A stretch of 63,112 nucleotides of DNA from Macrostomum lignano (lineage: Eukaryota), in contig NIVC01004043.1 in assembly GCA_002269645.1 (NCBI GenBank), positions 1 through 63,112 on the forward strand, in the 5' to 3' direction. Below the pieces are notes generated by a model. It searched no databases and was not told the DNA's origin. It saw nothing but the letters and a program-made list of their open reading frames with translations. Positions 12,801-49,065 of the stretch are shown here, in pieces (position 1 is the first letter of the stretch; every line of letters begins with the position of its first letter). A program made the position numbers and the translations under genes.

Positions 12801-14580
12801 CAATCCTACAGGTGACACTAACAGGTGGTGCCCTACTCAATCCTACAGGTGACACTAACAAATGGTGCCCTACTCAATCCTACAGGTGACACTAACAGGT
12901 ACCCTACTCAATCCTACAGGTGACACTAACAGGTGCCCTACTCAATCCTACAGGTGGTGCCCTACTCAATCCTACAGGTGACACTAACAGGTACCCTACT
13001 CAATCCTATTGGTGGTGCCCTACTCAATCCTATAGGTGACACTAACAGGTACCCTACTCAATCCTACAGGTGACACTAACGGATGGTGCCCTACTCAATC
13101 CTACAGGTGACACTAACAGGTGCCCTACTCAATCCTACAGGTGACACTAACAGGTACCCTACTCAATCCTACAGGTGACACTAACAGATGGTGCCCTACT
13201 CAATCCTAGAGGTGACACTAACAGGTGCCCTACTCAATCCTACAGGTGACACTAACAGGTGCCCTACTCAATCCTATAGGTGACACTAACAGGTACCCTA
13301 CTCAATCCTACAGGTGACACTAACAGATGGTGCCCTACTCAATCCTACAGGTGACACTAACAGGTACCCTACTCAATCCTACAGGTGACACTAACAGGTA
13401 CCCTACTCAATTCTACAGGTGACACTAACAGATGGTGCCCTACTCAATCCTACAGGTGACACTAACAGGTGGTGCCCTACTCAATCCTACAGGTGACACT
13501 AACAGGTGCCCTACTCAATCCTACAGGTGACACTAACGGATGGTGCCCTACTCAATCCTACTGGTGACACTAACAGGTGATGCCCTACTCAATCCTACAG
13601 GTGACACTAACAGGCGCCCTACTCAATCCTACAGGTGACACTAACAGCTGGTACCCTACTCAATCCTACAGGTGACACTAACAGGTACCCTACTCAATCC
13701 TACAGGTGACACTAACAGGTACCCTACTCAATCCTACACGTGACACTAACAGCTGGTACCCTACTCAATCCTACAGGTGATACTAACAGGTGCCCTACTC
13801 AATCCTACAGGTGACACTAACAGTTGCCCTACTCAATCCTACAGGTGACACTAACAGGTGCCCTACTCAATCCTACAGGTGACTCTAACAGGTGCCCTAC
13901 TCAATCCTACAGGTGACACTAACAGTTGCCCTACTCAATCCTACAGGTGACACTAACAGTTGCCCTACTCAATCCTACAGGTGACACTAACAGGTGCCCT
14001 ACTCAATCCTACAGGTGACACTAACAGGTACCCTACTCAATCCTACAGGTGACACTAACAGGTACCCTACTCAATCCTACAGGTGACACTAACAGATGGT
14101 GCCCTACTCAATCCTACAGGTGACACTAACAGGTGGTGCCCTACTCAATCCTACAGGTGACACTAACAGGTGCCCTACTCAATCCTACAGGTGACACTAA
14201 CGGATGGTGCCCTACTCAATCCTACTGGTGACACTAACAGGTGATGCCCTACTCAATCCTACAGGTGACACTAACAGGCGCCCTACTCAATCCTACAGGT
14301 GACACTAACAGCTGGTACCCTACTCAATCCTACAGGTGACACTAACAGGTACCCTACTCAATCCTACAGGTGACACTAACAGGTACCCTACTCAATCCTA
14401 CACGTGACACTAACAGCTGGTACCCTACTCAATCCTACAGGTGATACTAACAGGTGCCCTACTCAATCCTACAGGTGACACTAACAGTTGCCCTACTCAA
14501 TCCTACAGGTGACACTAACAGGTGCCCTACTCAATCCTGCAGGTGACTCTAACAGGTGCCCTACTCAATCCTACATGTGA
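9815..14580. repeat. 4.8-kb minisatellite. Core 34-bp unit CAGGTGACACTAACAGGTRCCCTACTCAATCCTA with 24-bp and 37-bp variants
   Basis: Continuous tandem array seen directly. Confidence 0.97.
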
Positions 14581-18176: not shown

Positions 18177-21100
18177 CTACTTTCTGTAGCGATTCCTACG
18201 AAAATGAAAGTGCAACTGGAACGTATTATTAACAAACTGGCAGCGGAACCCGTGCCTAAACGATGTGTCCCATTCGTTGCGTACAATTTTGAAAGCAACG
18301 TCTTCATAAGGCGGCCCAGCAGTGAAGCGCAGGATGGCAAATTGCGGATCGTCTTTGCATGGCTCGGTGCTGTAGCTGGGCGCCTTGGACTTGTCCAGCA
18401 GATCCGGGTAGAATATGTTGAACTTGTAGCCCTGAGCGATTAACAGGCGAGGTTTGGCTTTTGAACTCGAGCCTAGGTACCTGTCCATTATCAGCCCCTC
18501 TACCTGTCCTAAAATATCTCACTAACCTGTCCACCAGCAGTCTGTCTACCCTGTGCTTAATATAACTATCTACCTGTATAAATAATAACAATATTAACAA
18601 TTGATTACATTTGCCCCAATTGGGCCAGATGTGCAACCGACAGCTCAGCCGCAGCTATTGCGCGGCGCATCTGAAGGCTGCGTACGGCTGTTCAGTCCAA
18701 GGACTGGGGGGTCGCCACACACAGCCTCAATCACCCCAGCTAATGCTGGCACCCATTTTACAGCTGGGTGAACCGAAGCAATGCAGAGGCCTCTCTATCC
18801 GGCCTTCGGGTCCATTGAAGCTTTACAACAGTAATCTGGCCCGCTCAAGGCTTTTGCCTCTTCTCTCTCTCTCCTATCCCCACTCCCCTCTCTCCCCTCT
18901 CTCTGAGATCGTCTCCCCCCTTTTTCACCCTGTCTTGTTTCTTATCTCTTCTATTCCCTTTCCTTTCCTGGATTCTGCATTCTGAGCTGGATTCTGTATT
19001 CTGAGCTGGATTCTGCATTCTGAGCTGGATTCTGTATTCTGAGCTGGATTCTGCATACTGAGCTGGATTCTGCATTCTGAGCTGGATTCTGCATACTGAG
19101 CTGGATTCTGCATACTGAGCTGGATTCTGCATACTGAGCTGGATTCTGCATTCTGAGCTGGATTTTGCATACTGAGCTGGATTCTGCATTCTGAGCTGGA
19201 CTCTGCATTCTGAGCTGGATTCTGCATTCTGAGCTGGATTCTGCATTCTGAGCTGGACTCTGCATTCTGAGCTGGATTCTGCATACTGAGCTGGATTCTG
19301 CATTCTGCGCTGGATTCTGCATACTGAGCTGGATTCTGCATTCTGAGCTGGATTCTGCATACTGAGCTGGATTCTGCATTCTGAGCTGGACTCTGCATTC
19401 TGAGCTGGATTCTGTATTCTGAGCTGGACTCTGCATACTGAGCTGGATTCTGCATACTGAGCTGGATTCTGCATTCTGAGCTGGATTCTGCATACTGAGC
19501 TGGATTCTGCATTCTGAGCTGGATTCTGCATTCTGAGCTGGATTCTGTATTCTGAGCTGGATTCTGCATTCTGAGCTGGATTCTGCATTCTCAGCTGGAT
19601 TCTGCATTCTGAGCTGGACTCTGCATTCTGAGCTGGATTCTGTATTCTGAGCTGGACTCTTGCATACTGAGCTGGATTCTGCATACTGAGCTGGATTCTG
19701 CATTCTGCGCTGGATTCTGCATACTGAGCTGGATTCTGCATTCTGAGCTGGATTCTGCATTCTGAGCTGGACTCTGCATTCTGAGCTGGATTCTCCTTGA
19801 GGTAAATTTGCCAACCAGTAGATTTTAATCAAAACGAAAATAAACACAAATTTACATTAGTTTCCGCTCTCACCTGCACAATCTTCGGCGGCGGATTGTC
19901 CGAATCGAAATGCGTCCGATTATAAGCGCCCCAGTTGTAGCCGGTATTAACCCGATTAAAATACCGCGGCTTCTTTGGCTTCAGCCGGTCTGACCAGGCC
20001 GCCAGACCGGGAGTTTTCACCGCAATCTCTTCGGTTTTCTCTTCCGGCTCGGGCGCTGCCGCGTCGCCAGCCTGACGCCGGAGATGCTCCAGCCTGACCG
20101 ACTCTTCGCTCCAGTTGATCACTATCTGACCGGCGACCGTGTCCGGGTCGAGTTTTGCCGGCGAATATCGACCAGAATCGTACGCATCAAGAGCCTGCTG
20201 CTGCTGCTGCTGTTGCTTTTGCTGTTGCTGCCTCTGCTGCTCGGCCTCGTCGTCATCGGCTGACTCGGCGGTGTCGCCGCCGCCTTCCTCGGAGGCGGCG
20301 CTGCTGGTCGCAGTCGCTGCCGTGGCCGACGCCGCTGCCACTTCCGGGTCGTCGACTTCCGCTCCCTGGTCGGCCGACTGACGCTCCTAGAGTGTTTTGA
20401 CGGCGGGAATTGGTATAGAGGGGTGCTCCTGGACTGGGGTTAGGGGTATTTTTTAGATTTTATAATCAAAGTGAGGGGTATTTTAGATAGGGATTAGCGG
20501 GGCATTTCCGGTTGGACATTAAGGGGGAATTTTTGGATGGGATTATCTGGGTATTTCCTGATGAGGATCAGCGGGGCATTTCCTGATGAGGATCAGTGGG
20601 GTATTTCCTGATGAGGATCAGGGGGGTATTTCCTGATGAGGATCAGCGGGGTATTTCCTGATGAGGATCAGGGGGTATTTCCAGTTGAAAACGATCTACC
20701 ATAAAAATAAGCGCTAGAATCGCCAGAGCGCTAGAGTTTTCATCGGGTTTCCGGGTATGGATTAGCGGGGTACTTCCGATTGGGGATTAGCTCTAGTTAA
20801 GGTATTAAATGAAGATTCTATCAAACCTACTAACCTGCAGTCTCTGCATTCGCCTACGCAGCAGCACTTTATGCAACTCCTGCAGCGTAGCCTTCGCCTT
20901 GGCCACTTTAACTTTGTCCAGCATCTCCTCCCAGTAGGCCAGATCGGTGCCCGGTCCGGCTGCGCAGATTCTGGCGGACACCGAGTCTTCCAGAGCGGCC
21001 AACTGACTGGCCGACTTGCCCCTGATGACGGCGTCGATTCTGTCAGCAACGGCAGCCGTGGCGGAGCTGGCGGCCGGTGCACTCTTGCTATCCAGAGCGT

Positions 21101-23045
21101 GCTGAACTAGCAGAGCTACGCAGCTCCAGAAAGTCTCGCTGTCCCGACAGGCGCCTTCGGTTAAGCCGCTCTGCCGTTCCAATTTCTGATAGACGCCGAT
21201 ATCGACTTTTAAATCCTCGAGATCGTCAACGCTCAAGCCGGTGAGCAGGGCGTCCGGCGAATGGGCGTCTAAGAAAGCCAGACTTTCGTCTTCATCAAAT
21301 TCGTCATCATTGTCGTCCGCCCCGTCATCGCGTTTAATTTTAATACCAGAGATTCTTTGCAAAGCCTCGGCATACCTGCCCAGCAGGTCGATGGGCTTGG
21401 CGCGGCCTTCGGCTATGCGGATGGCCGATCTGGCCCGCGCCTGCTTCAAGTGGAACGCGTCCTCCTGCTGCCACCACTGGCGAAAGTTCTCAGACTCGCG
21501 ATCGCGCTGCTCCTGCTCCTGCTCCTTCAGCCGGGCCTCGCGTTCCAGCTCGTTCTGACGGCAACGCTCGCGGACCTGCGGTTTGTTTGGGGAATAGGAT
21601 AAGGCTATAGCAATGATCCTAATGAGCATGTGATGACACACCAGTGACCGATCTATGACTTCAATGACTGATCAATGACTGATCTATGACTTCAATGACT
21701 GATCAATGACTGATCTATGACTTCAATGACTGATCAATGACTGATCTATGACTTCAATGACTGATCAATGACTGATCTATGACTTCAATGACTGATCAAT
21801 GACTTCAATGACTGATCAATGACTGATCTATGACTTCAATGACTGATCAATGACTGATCTATGACTTCAATGACTGATCAATGACTTCAATGACTGATCA
21901 ATGACTGATCTATGACTTCAATGACTGATCAATGACTGATCTATGACTTCAATGACTGATCAATGACTGATCTATGACTTCAATGACTGATCAATGACTG
22001 ATCAATGATTTCAATGACTGATCAATGACTGATCTATGACTTCAATCACTGATCAATGACTGATCTATGACTTCAATGACTGATCAATGACTGATCAATG
22101 ACTGATCTATGACTTCAATGACTGATCAATGACTGATCTATGACTTCAATGACTGATCAATGACTGATCAATGACTTCAATGATTGATCTATGACGTCAA
22201 TGACTGATCAATGACTGATCTATGATTTCAATGACTGATCAATGACTGATCTATGACTTCAATGACTGATCAATGACTGATCAATGACTTCAATGATTGA
22301 TCTATGACGTCAATGACTGATCAATGACTGATCTATGATTTCAATGACTGATCAATGACTGATCTATGACTTCAATCACTGATCAATGACTGATCTATGA
22401 CTTCAATGACTGATCAATGACTTCAATGACTGATCTATGACGTCAATGACTAGAATTTTGAATTAGAATTATGACTCAGATAACCAAACAATAACTTAAA
22501 CAATGAACCCAAAACAAAACCTTTTCGAGCTCAGCCCGATTCTCAGCCGCTTTTCTCTCCACGTCGGCCATAGTGCCGCCCTCGCGTTGCAGTTTCTTAT
22601 GCCAAACGAAAGTCTGCGTGAGCTTCTCGTCGCCAAACGGATTATCTATATCCGTGTAGTCGCCCTCCCAGCCCAGTTCCCGACGCCGTCGTTCCGACTT
22701 AGCCGCCTTCTTAGCTAACCGACGGGCCCGCTTCTGCTCGGGCGTCTCGGCAGCTTTGAGCAGCGCTTTCACCCGACGACGCTCTTCAATAGAGGCGCCG
22801 CTAGACTGCTTTTCAGATTTCTGTCTGGCTGGAGAATCATCTGACGAGGACGAACTGCTGCTGCTGCTGCTGGAGGACTTCCGTCTGTGTCTCGATTTTC
22901 TGTGCTTCTCTACCTCATCGCCATGGCGGTGATGCTTTCGATCTTCGCGACGCCTGCCACTTTGTCTGTCACGATCTCTGTCTCTAGTTTTATCCCTGTC
23001 TCTGTCTCTGTCCACGCGATCTCTGTCGCGATAATGCTGATGATG
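18177..23045 (-). CDS. CACTIN: Cactin (spliceosome-associated factor). Exons about 23045-22521, 21575-20835, 20386-19874, 18431-18177; initiator codon not located
   Basis: Hallmark motifs ETPEQKRARRLAKK..DNPFGD..TFVWHKK; EDAFHLKQARARSAIRIAEGRAKPIDLL; KPKKPRYFNRVNTGYNWGAYNRTHFDSDNPPPKIVQ|GYKFNIFYPDL..AGPPYEDVAFKIV..HGFRCQF..FQLHFHFRRNRYRK. All three introns are GT-AG, phase 0. Confidence 0.95.
18966..19796. repeat. Minisatellite, 19-bp unit CTGAGCTGGATTCTGCATT, in the last cactin intron
   Basis: Tandem repeats; explains the 19-aa periodic ORFs in all three minus frames. Confidence 0.95.
20540..20685. repeat. Short minisatellite (GGGGTATTTCCTGATGAGGATCA-like) in cactin intron 2
   Basis: About 5 copies. 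Confidence 0.8.
21648..22452. repeat. Minisatellite built from TGATCAATGAC / TGATCTATGAC / TTCAATGAC subunits (about 31-bp period) in cactin intron 1
   Basis: Tandem repeats. Confidence 0.95.
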
Positions 23046-23124
23046 CTTTGATTTCGTTTCCAGAAAGTGTTAAAAGTTGGTTACAGTTTTTTATTTAAAA
23101 AATCGCTTTGTCTTTATAATAGAT

Positions 23125-25725: not shown

Positions 25726-26640
25726 CAGGTGGGATACTTCAGGGCTATTTTGGTGGGACACTTCAGGGCAATTCAGATAGGATAATTCAGGGCTATTCAG
25801 ATGGGATACTTCAGGGCTAGGGATATTTCAGGGCTATTCAGGTGGGATAAGTCAGGGCTATTCAGGTGGGATAAGTCAGGGCTATTCAGATGGGATACTT
25901 CAGGGCTATTCAGGTGGGATACTTCAGGGCTAGGGATATTTCAGGGCTATTCAGGTGGGATACTTCAGGGCTAGGGATATTTCAGGGCTATTCAGATGGG
26001 ATACTTCAGGGCTAGGGATATTTCAGGGCTATTCAGGTGGGATAAGTCAGGGCTATTCAGGTGGGATAAGTCAGGGCTATTCAGGTGGGATAAGTCGGGG
26101 CTATTCAGGTGGGATAAGTCAGGGCTATTCAGGTGGGATAAGTCAGGGCTATTCAGGTGGGATAAGTCAGGGCTATTCAGATGGGATACTTCAGGGCTAT
26201 TCAGGTGGGATAAGTCAGGGCTATTCAGGTGGGATACTTCAGGGCTATTCAGATGGGATACTTCAGGGCTATTTAGGTGGGATAAGTCAGGGCTATTCAG
26301 GTGGGATACTTCAGGGCTATGCAGATGGGATACTTTAGGGCTATTCAGATGGGATACTTCAGGGCTATTCAGATGGGATACTTCAGGGCTATTCAGGTGG
26401 GATAAGTCAGGGCTATTTAGGTGGGATAAGTCAGGGCTATTCAGGTGGGATAAGTCAGGGCTATTCAGGTGGGATACTTCAGGGCTATTCAGATGGGATA
26501 CTTCAGGGCTATTTAGGTGGGATACTTCAGGGCTATTCAGATGGGATACTTCAGGGCTATTCAGATTGGATATTTCAGGGCTATTCAGGTGGGATATTTC
26601 AGGGCTATTCAGGTGGGATATTTCAGGGCTATTCAGGTTA
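25726..26640. repeat. Minisatellite, 24-bp unit CAGGGCTATTCAGGTGGGATA(AGT/CTT)
   Basis: Tandem repeats. Confidence 0.95.
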
Positions 26641-26710
26641 AGTGCCTATCGTGATCAAGCCATGCATAAAAACGAAATAATCACTTTTCTGACTCAAAAA
26701 TAGTCAACGA

Positions 26711-29700
26711 TCAGATAGTCACATAGCCTTGAGCTCGCTGTTTAACTCGCCTACCCAAACAACCGAACAGCACGGCAAATCCCAAGAATGCGGCGAACAT
26801 TATCAACAGAATGATAAACATGGGGAGCGAGAGCGACATCAGAGGCGATTCGGCGGGTATCAGACCGGACTGAAGTATCGTGTAGCCAAGCGACCAGCCC
26901 ACTTTGTTAGCTGACGTGGCCTGACAAAAGATTTGAGAAATTTTAAACACCAAATTAATTTTGTTAAAATTAAACATTATAAAGAAACAATAAAGTCCAC
27001 AAATTATAATTTTTGTGCCAGCCTTACCTGTTCGCCTGCACTTGTAGAATGATTGACAGTAATCTAAAATTAATTATTACAAATAGCAGCATGCATTAAA
27101 TTTTTGTGTAAAAAAGTTAGCTAGAATAGTAATTTAAAGTGCTGGTACCTCAACTACAGAAGCTTAAGGTGGACTCATTATTAAATTACCCGTTCTCCCA
27201 ATTGACTCAAGGTGGACTCATTATTAAATTACCCGTTCTCCCAATTGACTCAAGGTGGACTCATTATTAAAATCCTTATTCTACCAATCGACTTAAGGTG
27301 GACTCATTACTAAAATCCTCATTCTCCCAATCGACTTAAGGTGGACTCATTATTAAAATCCTCATTCTCCCAATCGACTCAAGGTGGACTCATTATTAAA
27401 ATCCTCATAAATTCTCCCAATCGACTCAAGGTGGACTCACTATTAAATTCCCCATTCCCCATTCGACTCAAGGTGGACTCATAATTTAAATCCTCAAATT
27501 CCCATTAGACCCAAGGTGGGCTCATTATTAAAATCCTCATAAATTCTCCTATTCGACTCAAGGTAACCCTATTATTAAAATCCCATTATCCCAGAAAAAA
27601 ATATGTATAAAACCCCCCAAACATACCGAGTCCTCAAACTCAAGCAGACCCCAGTTAGTCTCATTGAATCCATAGGCATTCAATAACGACAGAACGTACA
27701 CTCCATCAAAGCAGTACCATCTCAGGAAGCTATCGCTATAGCCAATGGATGCCACATATCTCTTCTGGCAGAAGGCTCTCACAGCATTAACAAACTGCAT
27801 TCGGTCGGATCCAATATTACTAGCGTTGAAAAATGACGCCACATAGTAGAAGCCGGAGAATGCCACAAACTTGCTAGCGGGCGCCGGTTGGAAAACGTCA
27901 TTAAACGAGCATGTGCTCTGATCGCAACTGGCGTTAAAAAATTTACCAACTAATTTTGAGCAGTTCTCATAGCTGCCAGTGCCCCGAATTGTGAAATTGA
28001 GTCTAGCAAGAACTGATGGCGGAGGCGGCGGAGGCTGCAGCTGCCAGCGATCAGAGCAGGGACGTTGAAATACGTCAGTTGCTCGGACAGTTGCTGTGTA
28101 GTCAGCCTGTGTGGTATGGCGGATTGGTGCAAGATCATCACTTTGATCTGATACTTCAGAGCGCTGAAACCATCTATAATTAAGGGCCATAAAAACTTCT
28201 ATAAACACTTATTGGTTCTGAAACTTCCAATACTTCAGGCTACTGAAACCGCCGATACTTCAGGCTACTGAAACCTGCGATACTTCAGGCTACTGAAACC
28301 GCCGATACTTCAGGCTACTGAAACCACCGATACTTCAGGCTACTGAAACCACCGATACTTCAGGGCTACAAAACCCCCCGATACTTCAGGGCTACAAAAC
28401 CCCCCGATACTTCAGGGCTACAAAACCCCCCGATACTCCAGGGCTATAAAACATCCGATACTCCAGGGCTACAAAACCCCCCGATACTCCAGGGCTATAA
28501 AACATCCGATACTCCAGGGCTACAAAACCCCCCGATACTTCAGGGCTATAAAACATCCGATACTCCAGGGCTACAAAACCCCCCGATACTCCAGGGCTAC
28601 AAAACCCCCCGATACTCCAGGGCTACAAAACCCCCCGATACTTCAGGGCTATAAAACATCCGATACTTCAGGGCTACAAAACCCCCCGATACTCCAGGGC
28701 TACAAAACCCCCCGATACTCCAGGGCTACAAAACCCCCCGATACTCCAGGGCTACAAAACCCCCCGATACTTCAGGGCTATAAAACATCCGATACTTCAG
28801 GGCTACAAAACCCCCCGATACTCCAGGGCTATAAAACATCCGATACTCCAGGGCTACAAAACCCCCCGATACTCCAGGGCTACAAAACCCCCCGATACTC
28901 CAGGGCTACAAAACCCCCCGATACTTCAGGGCTATAAAACATCCGATACTTCAGGGCTACAAAACCCCCCGATACTCCAGGGCTACAAACCCCCCCGATA
29001 CTTCAGGGCTATAAAACATCCGATACTTCAGGGCTACAAAACCCCCCGATACTCCAGGGCTACAAACCCCCCGATACTTCAGGGCTATAAAACATCCGAT
29101 ACTTCAGGGCTACAAAACATTTAATGCTTTAGAAGCAGACCCCTAAAAATGCTCACCTGCCAACAAGGTGTATTTATGACAGCCGAACTATTATAGCCAG
29201 CATTAGCAATAACGCTAGCCAGCATCCTGTTTTCAGCTTCAGCTTTACCGTAGCACAGGAAGCTATAAGCGTACACATTGTACACTTTGCCGTACAAACT
29301 CAACGGTACAATGTGAGTCTTTGATGATACCGAATCAGCTGGAGTGAAATTGGCAGCCGGAACGAATGCAATCTGAGTGCTGGCGCCGCCGAGGTCCAAG
29401 CTGCCAAAGGTGTCAAAATCGTTAGCTAGCTGACGGTAGCCAACAGATCTGGCCACTCGCGAGGTCAGCGAGGAAGAGGCGAAATCTCCGAAACTGTTCT
29501 ACAATTGAGTCAGTAGAAAAGTGATTTTTCGATACATATCGGCAATGAATAGCGATATTGCATACCTTGAGATAATTAACGCTAATCCAGGCGCCAACTG
29601 CTTCTTCTGCTCCGGTGATTATACGAATCTGTCCTGTAGCGTTGGATACTTTGTAAGCGAACTTGCTGGTTAGTACCTGCCGAGCTCCGTTCAATACTAA

Positions 29701-31706
29701 CTCTGCTGCTGTGCTGTTGACGGCGCTGCGGGTTTTTTGTGTGTCAAGTGGAATTCTTAGAATGATGGCGCCATGCGCAGCAACTGAGAATCTGGTATTG
29801 AGGCTGGCCCAGGAACTGAGGATCTGGGATCGAGGCTCAGCAACTGAGGATCTGGGAGGCTGGCCCAGCAACTGAGGATCTTGGGAGGCTGGCCCAGCAA
29901 CTGAGGATCTGGGAGGCTGGCCCAGCAACTGAAGATCTTGGGAGGCTGGCCCAGCAACTGAGGATCTGGGAGGCTGGCCTAGCAACTGAGGATCTTAGGA
30001 GGCTGGCCCAGCAACTGAGGATCTGGAGGCTGGCCCAGCAACTGAGGATCTTGGGAGGCTGGCCCAGCAACTGAGGATCTTGGGAGGCTGGCCCAGCAAC
30101 CGAGGATCTGGGAGGCTGGCCCAGCAACTGAGGATCTTGGGAGGCTGGCCAAGCAACTGAGGATCTTGGGAGGCTGGCCCAGCAACTGAGGATCTGGGAG
30201 GCTGGCCCAGCAACTGAGGATCTTAGGAGGCTGGCCCAGCAACTGAGGATCTAGGAGGCTGGCCCAGCAACTGAGGATCTGGGAGGCTGGCCTAGCAACT
30301 GAGGATCTTAGGAGGCTGGCCCAGCAACTGAGGATCTGGAGGCTGGCCCAGCAACTGAGAATCTGGAGGCTGGCACAGCAACTGAGAATCTGGAGGCTGG
30401 CACAGCAACTGAGAATCTGGAGGCTGGCCCAGTAACTGAGAATTTGGAGGCTGGCCCAGCAACTGAGGATCTGGGAAACAGGCCCAGCAACTGAAGATAT
30501 GGGACACTGACAGGAAACATGTCTAAATTCTACAAGGCTGGCCATAGATATCAAGTATCTAGGGCTCGAACCCATGATGACAGTTGGCAGCGGACAATGC
30601 CATTCACCTGTACATTCGCATGCCGGCAGTGGCGCCAAGGAACAGTTCAGATTTGGCTTTCCGATCCTCTGGCACCACGGAATCCAACGATCTTAGCGAC
30701 CATTCAATCTGGTTAATGCCTTGAGAACTTTCTATTGGAGCAGCTGCAAAAAATAATTCGACAATTTTTAGTATCTAATCTTAACTGGTTTCCAGTTTAT
30801 AAATATTTTATAAACAAAACGTACAAGAATTATTGGCTACTGCGCGTTGAGACACTACGCCATTTCCATTTGTCTTGGACGCTGGCCAGGTGTAGATGTA
30901 CACTTTGGATGAGCTGGACCCGGCGTCGATAATGACTCCGTACTGTGGGTGCGAGCGGTGACGAGATAATTATCCAGTGACAAGTTTAGGATTACAGTAT
31001 CAGTAACATTCTAACAACACGAAGATCTGGAATCAGTGACATTCTAACAACACGAAGATCTGGAATCAGTGACATTCTAAACACAAATATCTGGAATCAG
31101 TGACATTCTAAACACGCAAAGATCTGGAATCAGTGACATTCTAAACACAAATATCTGGAATCAGTGACATTCTAAACACAAATATCTGGAATCAGTGACA
31201 TTTTAAACACAAATATCTGGAATCGGTGACATTCTAAACACGCAAATATCTGGAATCAGTGACATTCTAAACACAAATATCTGGAATCAGTGACATTCTA
31301 AACACAAATATCTGGAATCAGTGACATTTTAAACACAAATATCTGGAATCGGTGACATTCCAAACTGAAGCATCTGAGATCAGTGACATCCCAAATCGAA
31401 GCATCTGGAATCAGTGACATCCCAAACAAAAAGCAGCTGGAATCAGTGACATCCCAAACCGAGTCATCTGGAATCAGACATCCCAAAATGAATCACATGG
31501 AATTAGTGACATTCCAAACCTAAACAGGGGACCAGTGGCCCTGGTTTTTAATCTCACCGCATCAATAGGCTGATTGCCAATGACAAACATTGTAATGATG
31601 GCGGCAGCACCGAACAGGCCAATAGCCAGTGCGGCCGCAGCTAAGATCCACCAATTAGAAGCCGAGTCCCTGGCCAGCACCGGTTCGGGGGGCGGAGGCG
31701 GCGGAT
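26711..31706 (-). CDS. ENTPD: Ectonucleoside triphosphate diphosphohydrolase (GDA1/CD39 family, two-TM cell-surface type). Exons 31706-31558, 30942-30825, 30743-30608, 29725-29566, 29498-29157, 28106-27627, 26920-26711
   Basis: All five apyrase conserved regions: ACR1 YGVIIDAGSSSS, ACR2 FLGATAGMR, ACR3 ITGAEEAVGAWISVNY, ACR4 SLDLGGASTQ, ACR5 GWSLGY. N- and C-terminal TM helices and many N-glycosylation sequons. Every junction is GT-AG with matching phase (0,1,2,0,0,0). Family is certain; the orthologue is not assigned. Confidence 0.93.
27160..27590. repeat. Minisatellite, about 40-45 bp unit TCAAGGTGGACTCATTATTAAAATCCTCATTCTCCCAATCGAC, in the last NTPDase intron
   Basis: About 10 imperfect copies. 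Confidence 0.9.
28225..29120. repeat. Minisatellite, 26-27 bp unit GATACT(T/C)CAGGGCTA(C/T)AAAAC(CCCCC/ATCC), NTPDase intron
   Basis: Tandem repeats. Confidence 0.95.
29795..30500. repeat. Minisatellite, 27-29 bp unit GAGGATCTGGGAGGCTGGCCCAGCAACT, NTPDase intron
   Basis: Tandem repeats. Confidence 0.95.
31020..31520. repeat. Minisatellite, 30-32 bp unit ATCTGGAATCAGTGACATTCTAAACACAAAT, NTPDase intron
   Basis: Tandem repeats, degenerating toward 31500. Confidence 0.9.
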
Positions 31707-32091
31707 CTGCAGTTTAGCAATGAGACGGGATAAACAAAGATGAATCTCGTATGACAGATATTCAGATATTCAGGCGCTAATCAAGACTTCAAGACTAAAT
31801 CGTCTCTAGCCTGTCGTCGCTTGTCGTCACAGTGCCGTCGCTGCAATTTTTTCCCAGCGGGGCTGAAAATTAACGGCCCTGAGGGCCAACCCCCAAGTAC
31901 ATGGCTGACGATAAATAAAGTTAGGGCCGCTGTACACTCCTGTGTGAGTGTGTGCCTGTGCGTATGGCTGCGTACGTATCCGCGCGCACTAGTGTGCATG
32001 CTCAGGGTAGTCGGCGGAATGGGCAGTAATAATGGGCCTCTAACTAAAGCCAAAGTGCTTGAAGCTGCCTGCAAACTAACTGAACCCTCAC

Positions 32092-32347
32092 CAGAGTCGA
32101 AGGCATAGATAACGTCGCCATCAGACAGGCCAGCAGCAGCCAATGTCAAGTCCAATGCCAGCTCGCTATGCAAATCGTTGCGCAGTGACAAAGTTGGCAA
32201 TCTTCGAATTCTCATATGAGAGCAGAATTCGTCAAGAAGAGAGTCGAGAGTTCGATCAACGCCCAGACGCAGGTGCACCCGACCAGCAGCTTGACTGTAG
32301 GCCAAGTCGCACTTAACCGTGATGCTTATCACACCACCGCCTTGCAT
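32092..32347 (-). CDS. Ubiquitin-like (beta-grasp) domain exon, predicted first coding exon of the NTPDase gene
   Basis: MQGGGVISITVKC..GRVHLRLGVDRTLDSLLDEFCSHMRI..LSL..ELALDLTLAAAGLSDGDVIYAF follows the Ubl pattern (strand, strand, T-I/L helix, D-x-T-L..G-L-x-D-G-D-x-I). Ends in a phase-1 donor TCT G|GTGAGG at 32092/32091. Confidence 0.7.
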
Positions 32348-42000: not shown

Positions 42001-42199
42001 TTTTGTTATTTGACTAGTTAAATTGATAATGCTAGTTGAAAATATCTATTTTATAGGAACTATAAAGGTAAATATTCCTAGACTTCAAAGACTTCTTACT
42101 CGTATCTTGATTATTATGTTGTTACACTAATTGTCTAATGTATGTCATTGTCTTTTATACCAAATTATGCTAAATTGAATACACTGCTTTTTTATACGT

Positions 42200-42360
42200 A
42201 TACCTTAGTCGGGAAGGTAGCATAGTGTGCGCCAGAACTATTTTGATGGCTTTTGACCACTGTGCGCCGTGCGCCGTGAAGAAAATATTTTGTGCGCCGC
42301 AGCACGCCATGATAAGGTAAGTCTAAGCCAAGGTAAGGTAAGGTAAGGTAAGGTAAGGTA
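42200..42360 (+). mobile_element. Possible short retroposon remnant ending in an (AGGTA)n tail (mirror at about 57013-57175)
   Basis: GC-rich 130-bp island followed by about 7 AGGTA units in AT-rich DNA; no TSD identified. Confidence 0.3.
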
Positions 42361-42689
42361 ATTAATAATTCACTGGTAAACAAATTTGAATTTATGGTAG
42401 ACAAATTTGAATTTCATTTACGTATTTTACAAGCTGTTGAAACCCGCGGATTTTGAACCCGGGGAATTTCAATCCCTGGAACTATTTTTGCATGTACTCG
42501 TATTCTAAAATCTGAGGTCAAACTCAAACAAAAACTTGTTAATATATAGTTAGGTTAGAATTAAACATAAAATAGAGTACATTCGTGAAAAATTAGGATT
42601 TGAGGCAAACATTTATATTGTTGGCTGGGGTGCTGCGAACAGGCAAACTCTGGCCTCTGCCTCTCCTTATGTCCCTTGGATCCTTAAAA

Positions 42690-43759
42690 ACTTCGACCTT
42701 CTCTTCTGTTTCCTCTCCTCTCTCTCGTCTCTGTCTCTTCTCTCTCTCCTCTATCCCCTATTCTCTCGTCTATTCTCTCTCCCTTCTATTCTTTTATCCC
42801 TCCTCTCCTCCCTCCTCTCTACTCTCTACTCTCTCCTCTCATCTCTTCTCTTCTTTCCGCTCTCCTCTCTCCTCTCTTTTATCGTCTCTTCCCTCACCTC
42901 TCTTCTCTCTCGTCTTTGCTCTCTTATCTATCTCTTCTTTCTCCTCTTTTATCTTTTCTCTCTTCTCATTCTTTCTGCATGTTTTCTCCTCTCTCTTTCC
43001 CTCTCTCTCTCTCCTCTCTCTCCCTCTCTCTCCTCTTATCTCTCTGCTCTCTCCTGTCCTATATCTCTTTCTCCTCTAATCTCTCCCCTGTTTCCTCTCG
43101 TCTCTCGTCCTTTCTCCTCTTTCCCCTGTCTTCTTGGTTCTCTCCCCTCCCCTCCTCTCTCCTCACTCACTTCTCTCTCCCTTTGTCTCACCTCTCATCT
43201 CTTATTTCTATCCTTTTTCTCCCCCTCTCCCATCTCTTATCTGTTCACTCTTGTCTCTGGTCTGTCATCTCTCCTCTCTCATCTGCCATCTTTACTCTCT
43301 TATACTCGTATGTTCTCTCACCTCTCTTATCTGTACTCTTCGATCTTTCCCCTCTTTTGACTCCTCTCTTTCCTTTCTCCTTTTTCCCTTCTTTTCTCTT
43401 CCCTCTTCTATTCTCTCCCTCTCTTGTCTTCTCTCTTCTCTCTTCACTCTCCTCTCTCCTCTCATATATCGCGTTCACTCTCATCTTTGCTCTCTACCCC
43501 CACTCTCTTCTGTCATCTTTACTCTCCACTCTCCTGTGTACTCTTCTCTTTCCCCTCTACTGAATCCTCTCTTCTTACTCCTCTTCTCTTCCCTCTTCTA
43601 TACTCTCTCCCCTCTATTCTCTTCTCTTGTCTCTTTGCACTCTGCCCTCTCTTCCTTCATCTCTCATCTCTACTCTCTCATCTCCACAATCTCATCTCTT
43701 TCCTCTCTCCTCTTCTTCCCTTTACTTTATCATCTCTCCTTTCTCCTCTCTTCTTTCTC

Positions 43760-43807
<48 letters not shown>

Positions 43808-44135
43808 TCTTATTTCCTCTCTTCTCACTCCTCTCTCCCTCTCTCTCCCTTCCTATCTCCTCTCTGTTCTCTATTCTCTATTCTCTTCTCACTCTTCTCT
43901 ACTCTCCTCTCTCATCGATCCTCTGTCTCATCTCTCCCCTCTTCTCTCTTCCTCTTCTTACCTCTACTCTTTCCTCTCCCTCCTGTCTCCCCTCCTCTCG
44001 CTTCCTCCTCCCATATTCTCTGCTCTCTCCTCGTTCTCACCCCACTCGTCTCTCCTGTTATCTTATCTTTTCTCTTACCCCCTCTCGCCCTTCCTCTCTT
44101 TCTAATAGTATATTCCTTTTCTTTTTCACTCTCAT
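42690..44135. repeat. 1.45-kb polypyrimidine low-complexity tract including perfect (CT)n at about 43764-43803
   Basis: Almost exclusively C/T on the + strand. Confidence 0.95.
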
Positions 44136-45823: not shown

Positions 45824-48047
45824 GCTATGGTATGTATACTAATATATAATAAAATATTAATCAATATACATGATTTATGAAAAGGTCTTAAAAATCTAGA
45901 ATATTCATCACGAAATAAATAGCAATTTATACAGTTAGCAATTTAACTGGACAAATAGTAAAAATGCTATTTGTCTAGTCACCAGATAAATAACAACTGC
46001 CTTTGCCCTACTGGCTACTCTAAAGATAGAAAAAATGCTTCAAAAAACAGTTTTATTGTTTTAATACCTTGGAATATTTCCAAACATGCTAAAATCAGCT
46101 TCTCAAGTGGAGAAAGTGTGAAAAAACATTGAAAAAATAGTTTAACAAACAATTTAAGAGAAGAATGCCAATACCAAATAAGTGATTCAGCATTCAGCAG
46201 GAACTTCATGCATCAATCGATCAATGAAGAAGAATATTGTCAAGTTCTAATCTAGAGGACAACATTTTTAGGCCATAGTCTAAAGCTATACGTATAAAGC
46301 TTCTAATGGGCCAAGGCCTAGCCTAGCTGGGAGCCTGGGGCTAGCCCTAGGCTACCTAGCTCACTAGCTGTAATTTGAACAGGCCTAAGATATAATAGGA
46401 CTTAGCGAAGTTAGCGACTCAACTTCGAAGATTTCGGATCCTGAGAACTCCAAGTGAATGTCTCTAATAAAGCTTTAAGTAATGTCTTAAGAAAAGTAGT
46501 GTTATTTATTCTTCGATATGACCCGACCCCGCCGACCTGTTACGCCTTTAGTAGGCCACCTCATATAACAACAAAAAACGTGTTGAATCTAGTTCAAACT
46601 TGTGCTAAAACTTATTTTTTAAACAAATATTGTTTTTTAAAACTTTTTTGTTTTTCAATTTTGGTTTACTTTTGATTTTAAAAACTAAAAAAAACTTATA
46701 AATATATAAAATTTGCAGGCATCCAAAACTTGTTCATGATTTTTAATAAAGAATTTGAATTTAATAAAATTTTAAAGAACTGGGAAGGCCCGGCCGGGCC
46801 TGACGACGGGTACTAACTACTGAATTCACCGGCACTTGGGTTCACCGGATTTTTAACTTTATTTTTAAGGCTTAAAAATATACATAATCGATAGCGCAAG
46901 TAAAACTAGAGATGCGCCTAGATTTTTGGCTCTGCGCGTTGCCCCTGGACATCAGGAGGGCGATTTTTGTTATTTTTTGGGGGGTGAAACCGGCGGTGAA
47001 CCCAATAAATCCTTCCAGAGAGCTGAAAACCTGTCATGCAATATTTCAAAGCAAAATATAGGCAGATTTCGACGTGCGCATAAAATTTCAGCGTTGCGCG
47101 TTGCTCCTGAACTGCAGGAGAACGTTTTTTTGTTAAATTCCGGTGTTGAATGACTGCCGCTGAACTCCGCGGTGAACGAAATTAAGTGCGTTTCCCGAGT
47201 CGAAAAATAGTAAATTTTCCTATTAAAAAAGTTATCAAATTAAAGTTTTATCACTTTCATCAGCATTTTTGCACTCAATTTTGTGTTGACTGTTAAGCTA
47301 TTTATTTTAATGCAAAGCGAAAACATTAAAAAATATTTCGAACTGCGAGTCTTTATTGCGCAACGTGGCAGCAGGCAGTTACAGCGCACTTGCGCATAAA
47401 AAATACATTATATTTATACGCCGTGTGGTATTTTTGTGGCCATACTTAATAATGAAGCCTTTTATGCTGTTTTACTTCCTATATTTTTAGATTTATTTTT
47501 CAATTACGTCTTGAAACATGCAGTCAAAGTGTTAATATCAGTATAGGCAATAAAATAAAATTGGCATTTCTTGGCTTGATGCTTTTTACAACTTGTTAAA
47601 ACCTCTATTTTAATATTTCTTCTCTTCTAATAAGTCAAATTATAAACATAATATCTATTTAAGATTCCATAGTGCTTTTCCATTAAGTATAAATTCAATT
47701 ATATCAGGCAGGCACTTAGTATACTTTTATAAAATAATAACTACAACATGCAATAAAAATATTGACTATACTAGCCTATTTAATTACTTGTAATTTTATG
47801 TAATATTACTAGCCAATAAATATTTTTATATTTGATTTCATTGTAGTTATAAAAAATTTAAAAAATTCTGTATATTTATAACATTGTTGACTCATAAAAT
47901 TCTTTCTTGTTTTTTCTCCTAACCATAATTAATATTTCAAAAAATATACATCAAGAATTATTAATTTTTCTTGATTTGTAAATAAAAATATTACCCTGCA
48001 ATTTTCAATATTTTTCATGTATTTTATGTAAAATGCGCAATTTCATG

Positions 48048-49065
48048 TGTTTTTTGTGTTTCCATCAGTTTAGCTTGGGCTAACTAGAAACTGCAGACTG
48101 ACAGAATGCATTTCTTACTCCGGGATATTGCTTCTTTCTAAGTTAAAGAGACCAATATGCTCATTAGGAGTAGCTTTATGCCCAGAAGCACAGTACGCAC
48201 AATAAATTGTGTTTTTTGTGTTTCCATCAGTTTAGCCTGTTATTGGGCTATCTAGAAACTGAAGACTGACAGAATGCATTTCTTTCTCCGGGATATTGCT
48301 TCTTTCTAAGTTAAAGAGACCAATATGCTCATTAGGAGTAGCTTTATGCCCAGAAGCACAGTACGCACAATAAATTGTGTTTTTTGTGTTTCCATCAGTT
48401 TAGCCTGTTATTGGGCTATCTAGAAACTGAAGACTGACAGAATGCATTTCTTTCTCCGGGATATTGCTTCTTTCTAAGTTAAAGAGACCAATATGCTCAT
48501 TAGGAGTAGCTTTATGCCCAGAAGCACAGTACGCACAATAAATTGTGTTTTTTGTGTTTCCATCAGTTTAGCCTGTTATTGGGCTATCTAGAAACTGAAG
48601 ACTGACAGAATGCATTTCTTTCTCCGGGATATTGCTTCTTTCTAAGTTAAAGAGACCAATATGCTCATTAGGAGTAGCTTTATGCCCAGAAGCACAGTAC
48701 GCACAATAAATTGTGTTTTTTGTGTTTCCATCAGTTTAGCCTGTTATTGGGCTATCTAGAAACTGAAGACTGACAGAATGCATTTCTTTCTCCGGGATAT
48801 TGCTTCTTTCTAAGTTAAAGAGACCAATATGCTCATTAGGAGTAGCTTTATGCCCAGAAGCACAGTACGCACAATAAATTGTGTTTTTTGTGTTTCCATC
48901 AGTTTAGCCTGTTATTGGGCTATCTAGAAACTGAAGACTGACAGAATGCATATATCCTAAGTTTATGCTCACTTTATGGATATTTGTGTTTTTTGTGTTT
49001 CCATCAGTTTAGCCTGTTATTGGGCTATCTAGAAACTGAAGACTGACAGAATGTATTCCTTTTTA
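48048..49065. repeat. 168-bp tandem satellite, 5 units plus a partial unit
   Basis: TCCATCAG anchors at 48061, 48223, 48391, 48559, 48727, 48895 and 49000. Confidence 0.95.

What the first reader, a model, noticed from the sequence alone, without database searches (positions are those of the whole stretch)
26711..32347. Predicted ubiquitin-like domain fused to the cytoplasmic N-terminus of a CD39-type ecto-NTPDase
The first NTPDase exon (31706-31558) begins after a good acceptor (GCTAAACTGCAG) in phase 1, encodes PPPPPPEP and TM1, and has no Met before the helix. The Ubl exon 385 bp upstream has an ATG and ends in a phase-1 GTGAGG donor, so G+AT gives Asp and the frame is continuous. The eight exons total 1851 nt (616 aa): Ubl - polyPro - TM - apyrase ectodomain - TM. 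Cell-surface NTPDases as I know them have only short cytoplasmic tails, and I know of no Ubl-bearing member. A cytosolic Ubl could couple extracellular nucleotide hydrolysis to trafficking, p97/proteasome adaptors or a signalling scaffold. An SL AUG at this acceptor would be out of frame, which favours the fusion.
Basis: partly seen in the sequence, partly recalled or inferred. Interest (0 to 1): 0.8.

Follow-up and report, generated by a model that had tools for sequence, protein, structure and literature searches.

The report
Ecto-NTPDase with cytosolic ubiquitin-like domain
This flatworm gene really does encode a cell-surface ATP/ADP-hydrolysing enzyme (CD39 type) with a ubiquitin-like domain on its cytoplasmic N-terminus; the gene is already annotated and the same design occurs across invertebrate animals but not vertebrates, yet nobody seems to have studied what the extra domain does.

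Summary
The window is Macrostomum lignano contig NIVC01004043.1.

Residues 1-86 are predicted with high confidence as a beta-grasp (pLDDT 93-96). They superpose on SUMO, Rad60-SLD and ubiquitin. A flexible poly-Pro linker follows, then TM1, an NTPDase1/2-like ectodomain and TM2.

The architecture is not unique. It is found in a 41%-identical Macrostomum paralog and in ~600-aa NTPDases of:
- molluscs, annelids and a brachiopod
- sea spiders, myriapods, a damselfly and a shrimp
- a starfish and an acorn worm

It was absent from all 99 vertebrate ENTPD1/2/3/8 sequences examined. Intron-free RNA-derived contigs carry the fusion in one ORF.

The domain has no di-glycine, so it is a built-in Ubl, not a modifier. 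Its function is untested. My best inference is a cis-acting interaction and sorting module. It may work with a conserved C-terminal YxxPhi motif to control surface residence.

I found no paper describing it. It is a real, ancient, uncharacterised variant of a known enzyme family.

The parts
32092..32347 (-). Exon 1: start codon plus the whole ubiquitin-like (beta-grasp) domain, residues 1-85 and the first base of Asp86. The donor is G|GTGAGG in phase 1.
   Evidence: Searches give the sequence, the frame and the in-frame stop 12 nt upstream of the ATG. AF2 places strands at 6-13, 22-29, 53-56 and 79-84 and a helix at 34-45, with pLDDT 93-96. Foldseek matches SUMO, Rad60-SLD and ubiquitin. The four nucleotide differences from the second genomic copy are all synonymous.
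31707..32091 (-). Intron 1 (385 bp), GT...AG.
   Evidence: The intron contains no alternative ATG-initiated exon with a phase-1 donor. The ORF that reads through the donor (188 aa) is not conserved in the second copy.
31558..31706 (-). Exon 2: poly-Pro linker (DPPPPPPEP) and transmembrane helix 1, residues about 86-135.
   Evidence: In the AF2 model the linker (90-99) has pLDDT <50 and the TM helix spans 103-129.
30825..30942 (-). Exon 3: apyrase conserved region 1 (IDAGSSSSK).
30608..30743 (-). Exon 4: apyrase conserved region 2 (LGATAGMR).
29566..29725 (-). Exon 5: apyrase conserved region 3 (GAEEAVGAWISVNY).
29157..29498 (-). Exon 6: apyrase conserved region 4 (LDLGGASTQI).
27627..28106 (-). 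Exon 7: the C-terminal lobe of the ectodomain, holding six of the eight conserved cysteines.
27028..27063 (-). Micro-exon of 36 nt (ITVNHSTSAGEQ). It may be alternatively spliced.
   Evidence: The insert is unique among 31 family members. It is a low-confidence loop in the AF2 model. The exon and its splice sites are conserved in the second genomic copy. A ParaSite-type model of the other copy skips it (P0124).
26711..26920 (-). Last exon: apyrase conserved region 5 (GWSLGY), TM2, the basic cytosolic tail ending in YVTI (a YxxPhi motif), and the stop codon.

Best explanation
**Shown.** The region is one gene, BOX15_Mlig010970g1 of Macrostomum lignano. It encodes a two-pass, cell-surface-type ecto-nucleoside triphosphate diphosphohydrolase of the NTPDase1/2/3/8 group.

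Its cytoplasmic N-terminus carries an 86-residue ubiquitin-like beta-grasp domain. A flexible proline-rich linker of about 15 residues joins this domain to TM1. The domain has no C-terminal di-glycine, so it is a permanent, non-conjugatable Ubl.

The gene belongs to an old subfamily with this same layout: Ubl at Met1, linker, TM1, GDA1_CD39 ectodomain, TM2, then a tail with YxxPhi. The subfamily is present in spiralians, arthropods, echinoderms and hemichordates. It was not found in vertebrate ENTPD1/2/3/8.

**Inferred, about 0.35 on its own.** The Ubl is a cis-acting protein-interaction module on the cytosolic face. It would act like a built-in mono-ubiquitin-type signal read by ubiquitin- or Ubl-binding trafficking machinery (endocytic adaptors or ESCRT-0-type factors). 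Together with the conserved C-terminal YxxPhi motif, it would set how long the enzyme stays at the surface, and so how fast extracellular ATP/ADP is cleared. Alternative first exons may switch it off in some species.

The confidence value of 0.8 refers to the shown part (identity and architecture).
For: **Gene model**
- All nine exons have GT-AG borders and a continuous frame.
- The model is identical to deposited PAA48824.1 on this very 63,112-bp contig.
- That annotation derives from StringTie/TACO transcript assemblies plus TransDecoder (PMC5730564).
- The second genomic copy keeps every exon and splice site. It differs by 12 synonymous and 6 nonsynonymous codons. Exon 1 differs at 4 synonymous and 0 nonsynonymous sites.
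- No gene is annotated in the 10 kb upstream, and no alternative first exon lies in intron 1.

**Fold**
- AF2 mean pLDDT is 84.9 (N-terminal model) and 87.4 (full length), with a b-b-a-b-b order.
- Foldseek finds 420 PDB hits at E<=1e-3. The top hits are SUMO1/2 and Rad60 SLD2 (TM 0.90, rmsd 1.4 A).
- hhalign against ubiquitin gives probability 92.8%.
- Nearly all Pfam sub-threshold hits belong to ubiquitin-type families (YukD 13/14, Rad60-SLD 10/14, ubiquitin 7/14 members).

**Enzyme**
- GDA1_CD39 scores E 1.4e-76.
- The closest solved structures are rat NTPDase1 and NTPDase2.
- ACR1-5 are intact.
- All 12 N-glycosylation sequons lie between the TM helices.

**Conservation of the architecture**
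- 31 aligned proteins from Macrostomum (2), Owenia, Crassostrea, Mytilus, Solemya, Pinctada, Mercenaria, Patella, Plakobranchus, Lingula, Pycnogonum, Nymphon, Chamberlinius, Ischnura, Penaeus, Asterias and Saccoglossus share it; the rest are unnamed Logan/ENA/JGI sequences. A Strigamia model (not in the alignment) also carries the Ubl.
- Logan contig SRR18178439_38031 (2,367 nt) carries the 613-aa fusion as one uninterrupted ORF.

**Trafficking inference**
- A YxxPhi motif occurs in the C-tail of nearly all members (YVTI here), and most also have a terminal YG[AST]-Phi.
- The position equivalent to ubiquitin I44 is a conserved Leu.
- A Pecten isoform replaces only the Ubl exon.
Against: - I did not see junction-spanning reads for 32092>31706. 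Transcript support is indirect, through the way the deposited annotation was built.
- No experiment bears on function.
- The equivalents of ubiquitin H68 and V70 are variable, so a canonical I44 patch is not established.
- The best sequence-profile hits among solved structures are GTPase-binding beta-grasps (ELMO2 RBD E 1.8e-4, talin F0/F1), not ubiquitin itself.
- YxxPhi is a short motif. It is also present in invertebrate NTPDases that lack the Ubl.
- The window's own N-terminal sequence stays below Pfam thresholds.
Confidence: 0.8

Rival explanations
1. Gene-model artefact. The Ubl exon would belong to a separate short transcript, for example an upstream cistron of an operon. The NTPDase would then start elsewhere, from another first exon or from a spliced leader at 31706.
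For: M. lignano has operons, and transcriptional units can merge genes (PMC5730564; PMC8629364). I saw no junction reads directly. An ORF runs through the exon-1 donor for 188 aa.
Against: - The SL AUG at 31706 is out of frame, and there is no in-frame Met before TM1.
- No compatible alternative first exon lies in intron 1.
- The read-through ORF is not conserved in the second copy.
- The same Ubl-TM-NTPDase order is kept in a 41%-identical paralog and in more than 25 species across several phyla, including intron-free RNA-derived contigs.
Confidence: 0.03
2. The beta-grasp is a Ras-association/RBD-like module. It would bind a membrane-anchored small GTPase (Rap, Ras, Rho or Arl type) and couple intracellular signalling to ecto-nucleotidase activity or clustering. 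This would be inside-out regulation, as talin F0/F1 provides for integrins.
For: The best profile hits among solved structures are the ELMO2 RBD (E 1.8e-4) and talin-1/2 F0/F1 (6e-4 to 3e-3). Weak Pfam hits to RA, RBD and SIN1-RBD appear in a few members. The domain sits about 15-20 residues from the membrane.
Against: These E-values are marginal. Ubiquitin, SUMO and Rad60-type domains score similarly or better by structure. No GTPase-contact residues could be checked.
Confidence: 0.15
3. The Ubl is a proteasome/p97- or ERAD-coupling element, like the UBL of HERPUD1 or TMUB1. It would control biosynthetic quality control or degradation of the enzyme rather than its surface trafficking.
For: Known membrane proteins with a cytosolic N-terminal UBL act in ERAD (general knowledge, not tested here). 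Some profile hits are to proteasome-shuttle UBLs (DSK2, RAD23, DDI2) at E 0.05-0.5.
Against: Those hits are weak. The ectodomain is of the plasma-membrane NTPDase1/2 type, with sequons and disulfide cysteines. The conserved YxxPhi tail points to post-Golgi sorting.
Confidence: 0.12
4. The Ubl mainly mediates homo-oligomerisation, or constrains TM1. It would thereby tune catalysis allosterically; TM-helix mobility is known to regulate CD39.
For: NTPDase activity depends on oligomeric state and TM-helix dynamics (established for vertebrate NTPDase1-3; general knowledge). The Ubl is tethered close to TM1.
Against: The linker is predicted to be flexible (pLDDT <50), and its length and composition vary between taxa. 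That argues against rigid mechanical coupling. There is no evidence of self-association.
Confidence: 0.15

Closest known systems
Vertebrate cell-surface NTPDases (NTPDase1/CD39, NTPDase2, 3, 8)
   Same: GDA1_CD39 ectodomain with ACR1-5. About 32% identity to rat NTPDase1/2, with TM-scores of 0.82-0.87. Two TM helices lie at the N and C termini, and the extracellular domain is glycosylated and disulfide-bonded.
   Different: Vertebrate enzymes have a median of only about 48 residues before ACR1. None of the 99 vertebrate sequences examined matches the Ubl profile. Here an 86-aa Ubl plus linker precedes TM1. The first of the five vertebrate disulfide pairs is missing. The invertebrate YxxPhi tail is absent from the few vertebrate sequences inspected.
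Invertebrate 'ENTPD8-like/ENTPD1-like' RefSeq models (Crassostrea, Mytilus, Lingula, Asterias, Saccoglossus, Ischnura, Penaeus and others)
   Same: The same full architecture, with an N-terminal domain that aligns without internal gaps. The Ubl regions are 14-28% identical to the window's, or 48% for the Macrostomum paralog.
   Different: Most of them have a juxtamembrane Cys (C-N-x-W-W) where Macrostomum has Ser. They have acidic linkers instead of poly-Pro, a second terminal YG[AST]-Phi motif, and no micro-exon insert.
Membrane proteins with an integral cytosolic UBL (HERPUD1, TMUB1/2; lipid-anchored MUB/UBL3)
   Same: A non-cleaved ubiquitin-fold domain held at a membrane surface on the cytosolic side. 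This is a comparison by design, drawn from general knowledge.
   Different: Those proteins are ER/ERAD or vesicle-sorting factors with no catalytic ectodomain. No specific sequence relationship was detected or tested here.
SUMO and Rad60 SUMO-like domain; ubiquitin
   Same: These are the top structural matches (TM 0.76-0.90, rmsd 1.4-2.8 A over about 80 residues). The profile-to-ubiquitin probability is 92.8%.
   Different: Identity is only 16-21%. There is no di-glycine tail. The domain is N-terminal and fused to a membrane enzyme.
Bacterial type VII secretion EccD / YukD
   Same: A cytosolic ubiquitin-like domain directly followed by transmembrane helices. ESX-3 EccD3 is among the Foldseek hits over 131-133 columns, and YukD is the most frequent Pfam sub-threshold hit.
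   Different: It is a bacterial secretion component with 11 TM helices. The rmsd exceeds 10 A over the whole alignment. This is an analogy of layout, not evidence of common descent.
ELMO RBD and talin/kindlin F0-F1 (GTPase-binding beta-grasps)
   Same: The best sequence-profile hits among solved structures (E 1.8e-4 to 3e-3). They act next to the plasma membrane.
   Different: The scores are marginal, and GTPase binding is untested.

Membership tests
Cell-surface E-NTPDase (NTPDase1/2/3/8 group; Pfam PF01150 GDA1_CD39) | GDA1_CD39 domain above the Pfam gathering score | tested here: met
   258.3 bits against a cut-off of 24.9, E 1.4e-76, residues 134-574.
Cell-surface E-NTPDase (NTPDase1/2/3/8 group; Pfam PF01150 GDA1_CD39) | Five apyrase conserved regions with their phosphate-binding and catalytic residues | tested here: met
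   The motifs are DAGSSSS (the consensus Thr is Ser here), LGATAGMR, GAEEAVGAW, DLGGASTQ and GWSLGY. The invariant alignment columns are retained.
Cell-surface E-NTPDase (NTPDase1/2/3/8 group; Pfam PF01150 GDA1_CD39) | One TM helix at each end flanking the ectodomain | tested here: met
   The AF2 model has helices at 103-129 and 591-621. All 12 sequons lie between them, and the C-tail is basic.
Cell-surface E-NTPDase (NTPDase1/2/3/8 group; Pfam PF01150 GDA1_CD39) | Closer to NTPDase1/2 than to the intracellular NTPDase4-7 or to plant and microbial apyrases | tested here: met
   By phmmer, NTPDase1 scores 1.3e-61 and NTPDase2 1.2e-55, against 3.9e-20 for NTPDase4. By Foldseek, the TM-score is 0.82-0.87 against 0.62.
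Cell-surface E-NTPDase (NTPDase1/2/3/8 group; Pfam PF01150 GDA1_CD39) | Ten conserved ectodomain cysteines (five disulfides) | tested here: inconclusive
   Eight are present (C355, 385, 404, 436, 448, 453, 500, 519). The first pair, between ACR1 and ACR2, is absent in Macrostomum but present in other Ubl-NTPDases.
Cell-surface E-NTPDase (NTPDase1/2/3/8 group; Pfam PF01150 GDA1_CD39) | Ca/Mg-dependent hydrolysis of extracellular NTP/NDP | not testable with these tools
   This needs expression and an enzyme assay.
Ubiquitin-like beta-grasp superfamily (integral UBL domain) | Beta-grasp topology (b1-b2-a1-b3-b4-b5) | tested here: met
   The AF2 model has strands at 6-13, 22-29, 53-56 and 79-84 and a helix at 34-45, with pLDDT 93-96. 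The result was reproduced in two independent runs.
Ubiquitin-like beta-grasp superfamily (integral UBL domain) | Structural superposition on solved ubiquitin-fold proteins | tested here: met
   420 PDB matches at E<=1e-3. Matches include SUMO1/2, archaeal ubiquitin and Rad60 SLD2 (TM 0.90, rmsd 1.4 A).
Ubiquitin-like beta-grasp superfamily (integral UBL domain) | Sequence match to a curated ubiquitin-clan family above threshold | tested here: inconclusive
   The window's own sequence scores YukD 19.7 bits (cut-off 27) and Rad60-SLD 14.4 bits (cut-off 23.8). At family level, 7 of 14 members hit PF00240 (best E 1.4e-5). hhalign to ubiquitin gives 92.8%. The profile also finds poly-Ubl repeat proteins.
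Ubiquitin-like modifiers (ubiquitin, SUMO, NEDD8...) | C-terminal di-glycine exposed or processed for conjugation | tested here: not met
   The domain ends ...DVIYAFDSD and runs straight into PPPPPP and TM1. No member of the family alignment has GG there. It is therefore a built-in UBL and not a modifier.
Ubiquitin-like beta-grasp superfamily (integral UBL domain) | Conserved hydrophobic I44-type recognition patch | tested here: inconclusive
   The I44 equivalent (L55) is a conserved Leu, Ile or Met. The H68 and V70 equivalents vary. No coordinates were available for surface mapping.
Invertebrate Ubl-NTPDase subfamily (unnamed; defined here by architecture) | Ubl starting within about 10 residues of Met1, then a linker, TM1, GDA1_CD39 and TM2 | tested here: met
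   The alignment of 31 proteins has no internal gaps in the Ubl. The Ubl HMM scores E 3e-21 to 1.5e-29 in the 15 of the best 120 NTPDase hits that carry it.
Invertebrate Ubl-NTPDase subfamily (unnamed; defined here by architecture) | YxxPhi motif in the cytosolic C-tail | tested here: met
   YVTI here and YKPF in the paralog. Most other members have YERL, YQRL, YEKI and similar.
Invertebrate Ubl-NTPDase subfamily (unnamed; defined here by architecture) | Juxtamembrane Cys (C-N-x-W-W), a candidate acylation site | tested here: not met
   Macrostomum has ASNWW and LSTWW, with Ser in place of Cys.
Ras-association / Ras-binding beta-grasp domains | GTP-dependent binding of a small GTPase | not testable with these tools
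   Only marginal profile similarity is available: ELMO2 RBD 1.8e-4 and talin F0/F1.

The most novel reading that the evidence does not exclude
The ancestral bilaterian CD39-type ecto-nucleotidase carried a cytosolic ubiquitin-fold domain. This domain would let the cell's ubiquitin-reading sorting machinery, or a small GTPase, set how much enzyme sits at the surface. That would be an inside-out control of purinergic signal termination. The vertebrate ENTPD1/2/3/8 paralogues would have lost it and replaced it with short acylated tails. In some invertebrates it would be toggled by alternative first exons.
Probability: 0.3. Interest if true: 0.7.

Novelty: new variant of a known kind. Interest (0 to 1): 0.5.

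Why it matters
Ecto-NTPDases end extracellular ATP/ADP signalling. How cells regulate their surface abundance from the inside is poorly understood, and vertebrate enzymes offer only very short cytoplasmic tails to work with.

A folded ubiquitin-like domain is conserved on the cytosolic side of these enzymes in flatworms, molluscs, annelids, brachiopods, arthropods, echinoderms and hemichordates. That gives a concrete, testable handle for such regulation.

It also marks a clear difference between invertebrate and vertebrate purinergic systems. Macrostomum lignano is transgenic- and RNAi-tractable, and oysters and mussels have abundant expression data, so function can be tested directly.

Tried and rejected
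1. **Word-indexed homolog search with the N-terminal 175 aa.** It returned nothing, although an identical N-terminus is in the database. I treat this as a limit of candidate selection, not as evidence of absence.

2. **Third homolog search with the Ubl-only alignment.** It gave only four short unnamed fragments and was uninformative.

3. **Neighbour-joining tree of the catalytic domain, 134 sequences.**
   - All Ubl-bearing proteins fall on the invertebrate side of a split from 99 vertebrate ENTPD1/2/3/8 sequences.
   - The Ubl-bearing proteins do not form a clean clade. Five Ubl-less invertebrate sequences are interspersed, and at least one of them is an alternative-first-exon isoform.
   - The tree therefore cannot say whether there was one gain with many losses or isoform differences.

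4. **Read-through ORF past the exon-1 donor (188 aa).** I considered it as a possible soluble-Ubl isoform. I rejected it as coding because the second copy has three nonsynonymous changes and an indel that truncates it.

5. **Alternative first exons within 6 kb upstream.** The nearest compatible candidate is the Ubl exon itself.

6. **Rfam scan of the window.** No hits.

7. **Literature searches for Ubl plus NTPDase, ENTPD or apyrase.** No paper describes the architecture. Subscription-only literature was not searched.

Full report
**What is in the sequence.**

On the minus strand between 32347 and 26711 lies a multi-exon gene.

- Exon 1 (32347-32092, 256 nt) opens with ATG. A stop lies 12 nt upstream in the same frame. 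The exon ends in phase 1 at G|GTGAGG.
- After a 385-bp intron, exon 2 (31706-31558) follows GCTAAACTGCAG and begins AT, so the junction codon is GAT (Asp).
- Exon 2 encodes DPPPPPPEP and a hydrophobic helix. Its first Met is inside that helix.
- The M. lignano spliced leader ends ...TTGCATG (PMC8629364). Placed at 31706, its AUG reads another frame that stops after 22 codons.
- A scan of 6 kb upstream found no closer ATG-initiated exon with a phase-1 donor.

**Identity of the locus and transcript support.**

The window is the whole contig NIVC01004043.1 (63,112 bp) of the Macrostomum lignano Mlig_3_7 assembly. Its deposited CDS, BOX15_Mlig010970g1 / PAA48824.1 (628 aa), spans exactly 26711-32347.

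The GenBank annotation of this assembly was not made ab initio. It comes from genome-guided StringTie/TACO assemblies of RNA-seq plus a de novo transcriptome, with boundaries set by trans-splicing and poly(A) reads, and ORFs called by TransDecoder (PMC5730564). The Ubl-to-TM1 junction is therefore supported by transcript data, although I could not inspect the reads myself.

A second genomic copy (NIVC01000523.1) gives further support:
- It keeps all nine exons and splice sites.
- Across exons 1-8 the two copies differ at 12 synonymous and 6 nonsynonymous codons.
- Exon 1 has four differences, all synonymous.
- The ORF that runs through the exon-1 donor (188 aa here) is broken differently in that copy, with three nonsynonymous changes. 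It is therefore intron, not coding.
- No other gene is annotated within 10 kb upstream.

**The N-terminal domain is a beta-grasp.**

The window's own 86 residues give only sub-threshold Pfam hits, and both are to ubiquitin-clan families: YukD E 0.0015 and Rad60-SLD E 0.034.

With a 14-sequence family alignment, the evidence is stronger:
- Nearly all weak hits are ubiquitin-type families: YukD in 13/14 members, Rad60-SLD in 10/14, ubiquitin in 7/14, TUG-UBL1 in 6/14.
- A profile search of solved-structure sequences returns almost only ubiquitin-fold domains: ELMO2 RBD, talin F0/F1, cordon-bleu, Rad60, DSK2 and RAD23.
- hhalign of a 31-sequence profile against ubiquitin gives probability 92.8%.

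AlphaFold2 predicts strands at 6-13, 22-29, 53-56 and 79-84 and a helix at 34-45, with pLDDT 93-96. This held both for residues 1-145 and for the full-length protein.

Foldseek finds 420 PDB matches at E<=1e-3, led by SUMO1/2, an archaeal ubiquitin and Rad60 SLD2 (TM 0.90, rmsd 1.4 A).

The domain ends ...IYAFDSD and continues directly into the linker. It has no di-glycine, so it is a built-in Ubl and not a conjugatable modifier.

**The rest of the protein is a cell-surface NTPDase.**

- GDA1_CD39 scores E 1.4e-76.
- The nearest solved structures are rat NTPDase1 (1.3e-61) and NTPDase2 (1.2e-55), far ahead of NTPDase4.
- ACR1-5 are intact.
- The full-length model (pLDDT 87.4, pTM 0.77) has a flexible poly-Pro linker (residues 90-99, pLDDT <50), TM1 at 103-129 and TM2 at 591-621.
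- All 12 N-X-S/T sequons and the eight conserved cysteines lie between the two helices, and the C-tail is basic.

By the family's known topology, the Ubl is therefore cytosolic. This is inferred from the layout and was not tested.

**The architecture is old and widespread.**

Among the best 120 NTPDase homologs, 15 carry the domain (Ubl HMM E 3e-21 to 1.5e-29). The other 105 do not, and 99 of those are vertebrate ENTPD1/2/3/8. The Ubl-less sequences have a median of about 48 residues before ACR1.

An exhaustive profile search of 1.84 billion representative proteins found 216 hits at E<=1e-3. They fall into three kinds:
- About 600-aa proteins matched at their extreme N-terminus.
- Short first-exon fragments.
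- Generic poly-Ubl repeat proteins (a diatom protein, for example).

Named members with the full Ubl-TM-NTPDase layout come from:
- Flatworm and annelid: Macrostomum (two paralogs, 41% identical) and Owenia.
- Molluscs: Crassostrea, Mytilus, Solemya, Pinctada, Mercenaria, Patella and Plakobranchus.
- Brachiopod: Lingula.
- Arthropods: Pycnogonum, Nymphon, Chamberlinius, Strigamia, Ischnura and Penaeus.
- Deuterostomes: Asterias and Saccoglossus.

A 2,367-nt Logan contig (SRR18178439) carries a 613-aa oyster-like member as one uninterrupted ORF. This is what an mRNA-derived contig looks like.

One Macrostomum paralog is already auto-named 'Ubiquitin-like domain-containing protein' in UniRef. 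However, six full-text searches found no paper that describes the architecture.

**Clues to function.**

- The C-terminal cytosolic tail of almost every family member carries a YxxPhi motif (YERL, YQRL, YEKI; YVTI here and YKPF in the paralog). Most members also end in YG[AST]-Phi. YxxPhi is the classical adaptor-complex sorting signal (general knowledge).
- Under the ubiquitin alignment, the I44-equivalent position is a conserved Leu (L55). The H68 and V70 equivalents vary.
- Most taxa have a juxtamembrane Cys (C-N-x-W-W), reminiscent of the palmitoylated Cys of CD39 (general knowledge). Macrostomum has Ser at that position.
- A Pecten isoform replaces only the Ubl exon with a short alternative first exon and rejoins at that Cys. 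An Octopus homolog starts MGCCGS. This suggests the Ubl is an exchangeable membrane-proximal module.

From these clues I infer, without experimental support, that the Ubl is a cis-acting interaction and sorting module that controls surface residence. I put about 0.35 on this.

Three alternatives remain open: a GTPase-binding RA-like role (0.15), proteasome/ERAD coupling (0.12), and oligomerisation or allosteric control (0.15).

**Verdict.**

The gene is already annotated as a hypothetical protein. It is one member of a pan-bilaterian invertebrate subfamily, so it is not a Macrostomum oddity.

Its novelty lies in the apparent absence of any description or functional study of the Ubl-NTPDase design. 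Interest is moderate.

Noticed in passing
window 27028-27063 (minus strand): A 36-nt micro-exon (ITVNHSTSAGEQ, containing an N-H-S sequon) is included in the deposited CDS. It is conserved with its splice sites in the second genomic copy. However, it adds a 12-residue insert just before ACR5 that none of 30 other family members has, and a ParaSite-type model skips it. It may be a lineage-specific alternative exon.
   Followed up: partly
window 25726-31477; also 1457-25486: Introns 2, 4, 6 and 7 and the 3' flank of the gene are each filled by a different minisatellite, with units of 24-43 bp and 10-39 copies. The intron-6 array (28230-29118) and the 3'-flank array (25726-26638) share the 14-nt core ATACTTCAGGGCTA. 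At least a dozen further arrays with unrelated 19-34-bp units occupy the first 25 kb of the window. One of them, with a 34-bp unit, spans 4.8 kb at 9814-14580.
   Followed up: partly
L003 (NIVC01000523.1) 9964-10172, homologous to window 26920-26711: The second genomic copy of the gene (about 99% identical in exons) has a 1-nt indel in the last exon. The indel truncates its annotated protein (P0001, 597 aa) before TM2. This is either a decaying duplicate or a long-read assembly error.
   Followed up: partly
window 31784-32347 (minus strand): The exon-1 reading frame stays open for 102 codons beyond the donor site, giving a 188-aa read-through ORF. The extension is not conserved in the second copy, so it is probably a chance open frame in the intron.
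   Followed up: yes
P0121 residues 87-99 and 412-423 (window exon 2 and exon 7): The peptide pattern PPPPPP-x(1,2)-VLAR occurs twice in the protein. One copy is in the cytosolic linker (PPPPPPEPVLARD) and one is in the ectodomain (PPPPPPSVLARL). The DNA of the two copies is not identical, and I have no explanation.
   Followed up: no
C-terminal tails of family members (window 26711-26760 for this gene): Conserved cytosolic tyrosine motifs are present in invertebrate NTPDase1/2/3/8-like proteins, with or without the Ubl. One is a YxxPhi about 10-15 residues after TM2. The other is a terminal YG[AST][IVLF]. Neither appears in the few vertebrate sequences inspected.
   Followed up: partly
P0041 (Pecten maximus ENTPD2-like isoform X2) and P0022 (Octopus): A scallop isoform lacks the Ubl but rejoins the family sequence exactly at the juxtamembrane C-N-I-W-W. 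This implies an alternative first exon. The Octopus homolog instead starts MGCCGS, a likely acylation motif.
   Followed up: no
P0171 (Strigamia maritima T1IIW9, 1697 aa): This gene model strings a Ubl-NTPDase together with two further Ubl-less NTPDase units. It is probably a tandem gene cluster merged by annotation.
   Followed up: no
window 18177-23054 (minus strand): The downstream neighbour is an annotated 680-aa protein with no Pfam hit. A 682-aa counterpart lies in the same position next to the second NTPDase copy, so the duplication covers both genes.
   Followed up: no
window 42001-44000 and 48046-48951: One 2-kb block has extreme strand composition bias (GC skew -0.58, AT skew -0.47). 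Separately, there is a 168-bp unit repeated 5.4 times at 98% identity.
   Followed up: no
tool behaviour: The word-indexed protein search with the N-terminal 175 aa returned no hit. Yet proteins with an identical N-terminus are in the same database and were found with the full-length query.
   Followed up: partly
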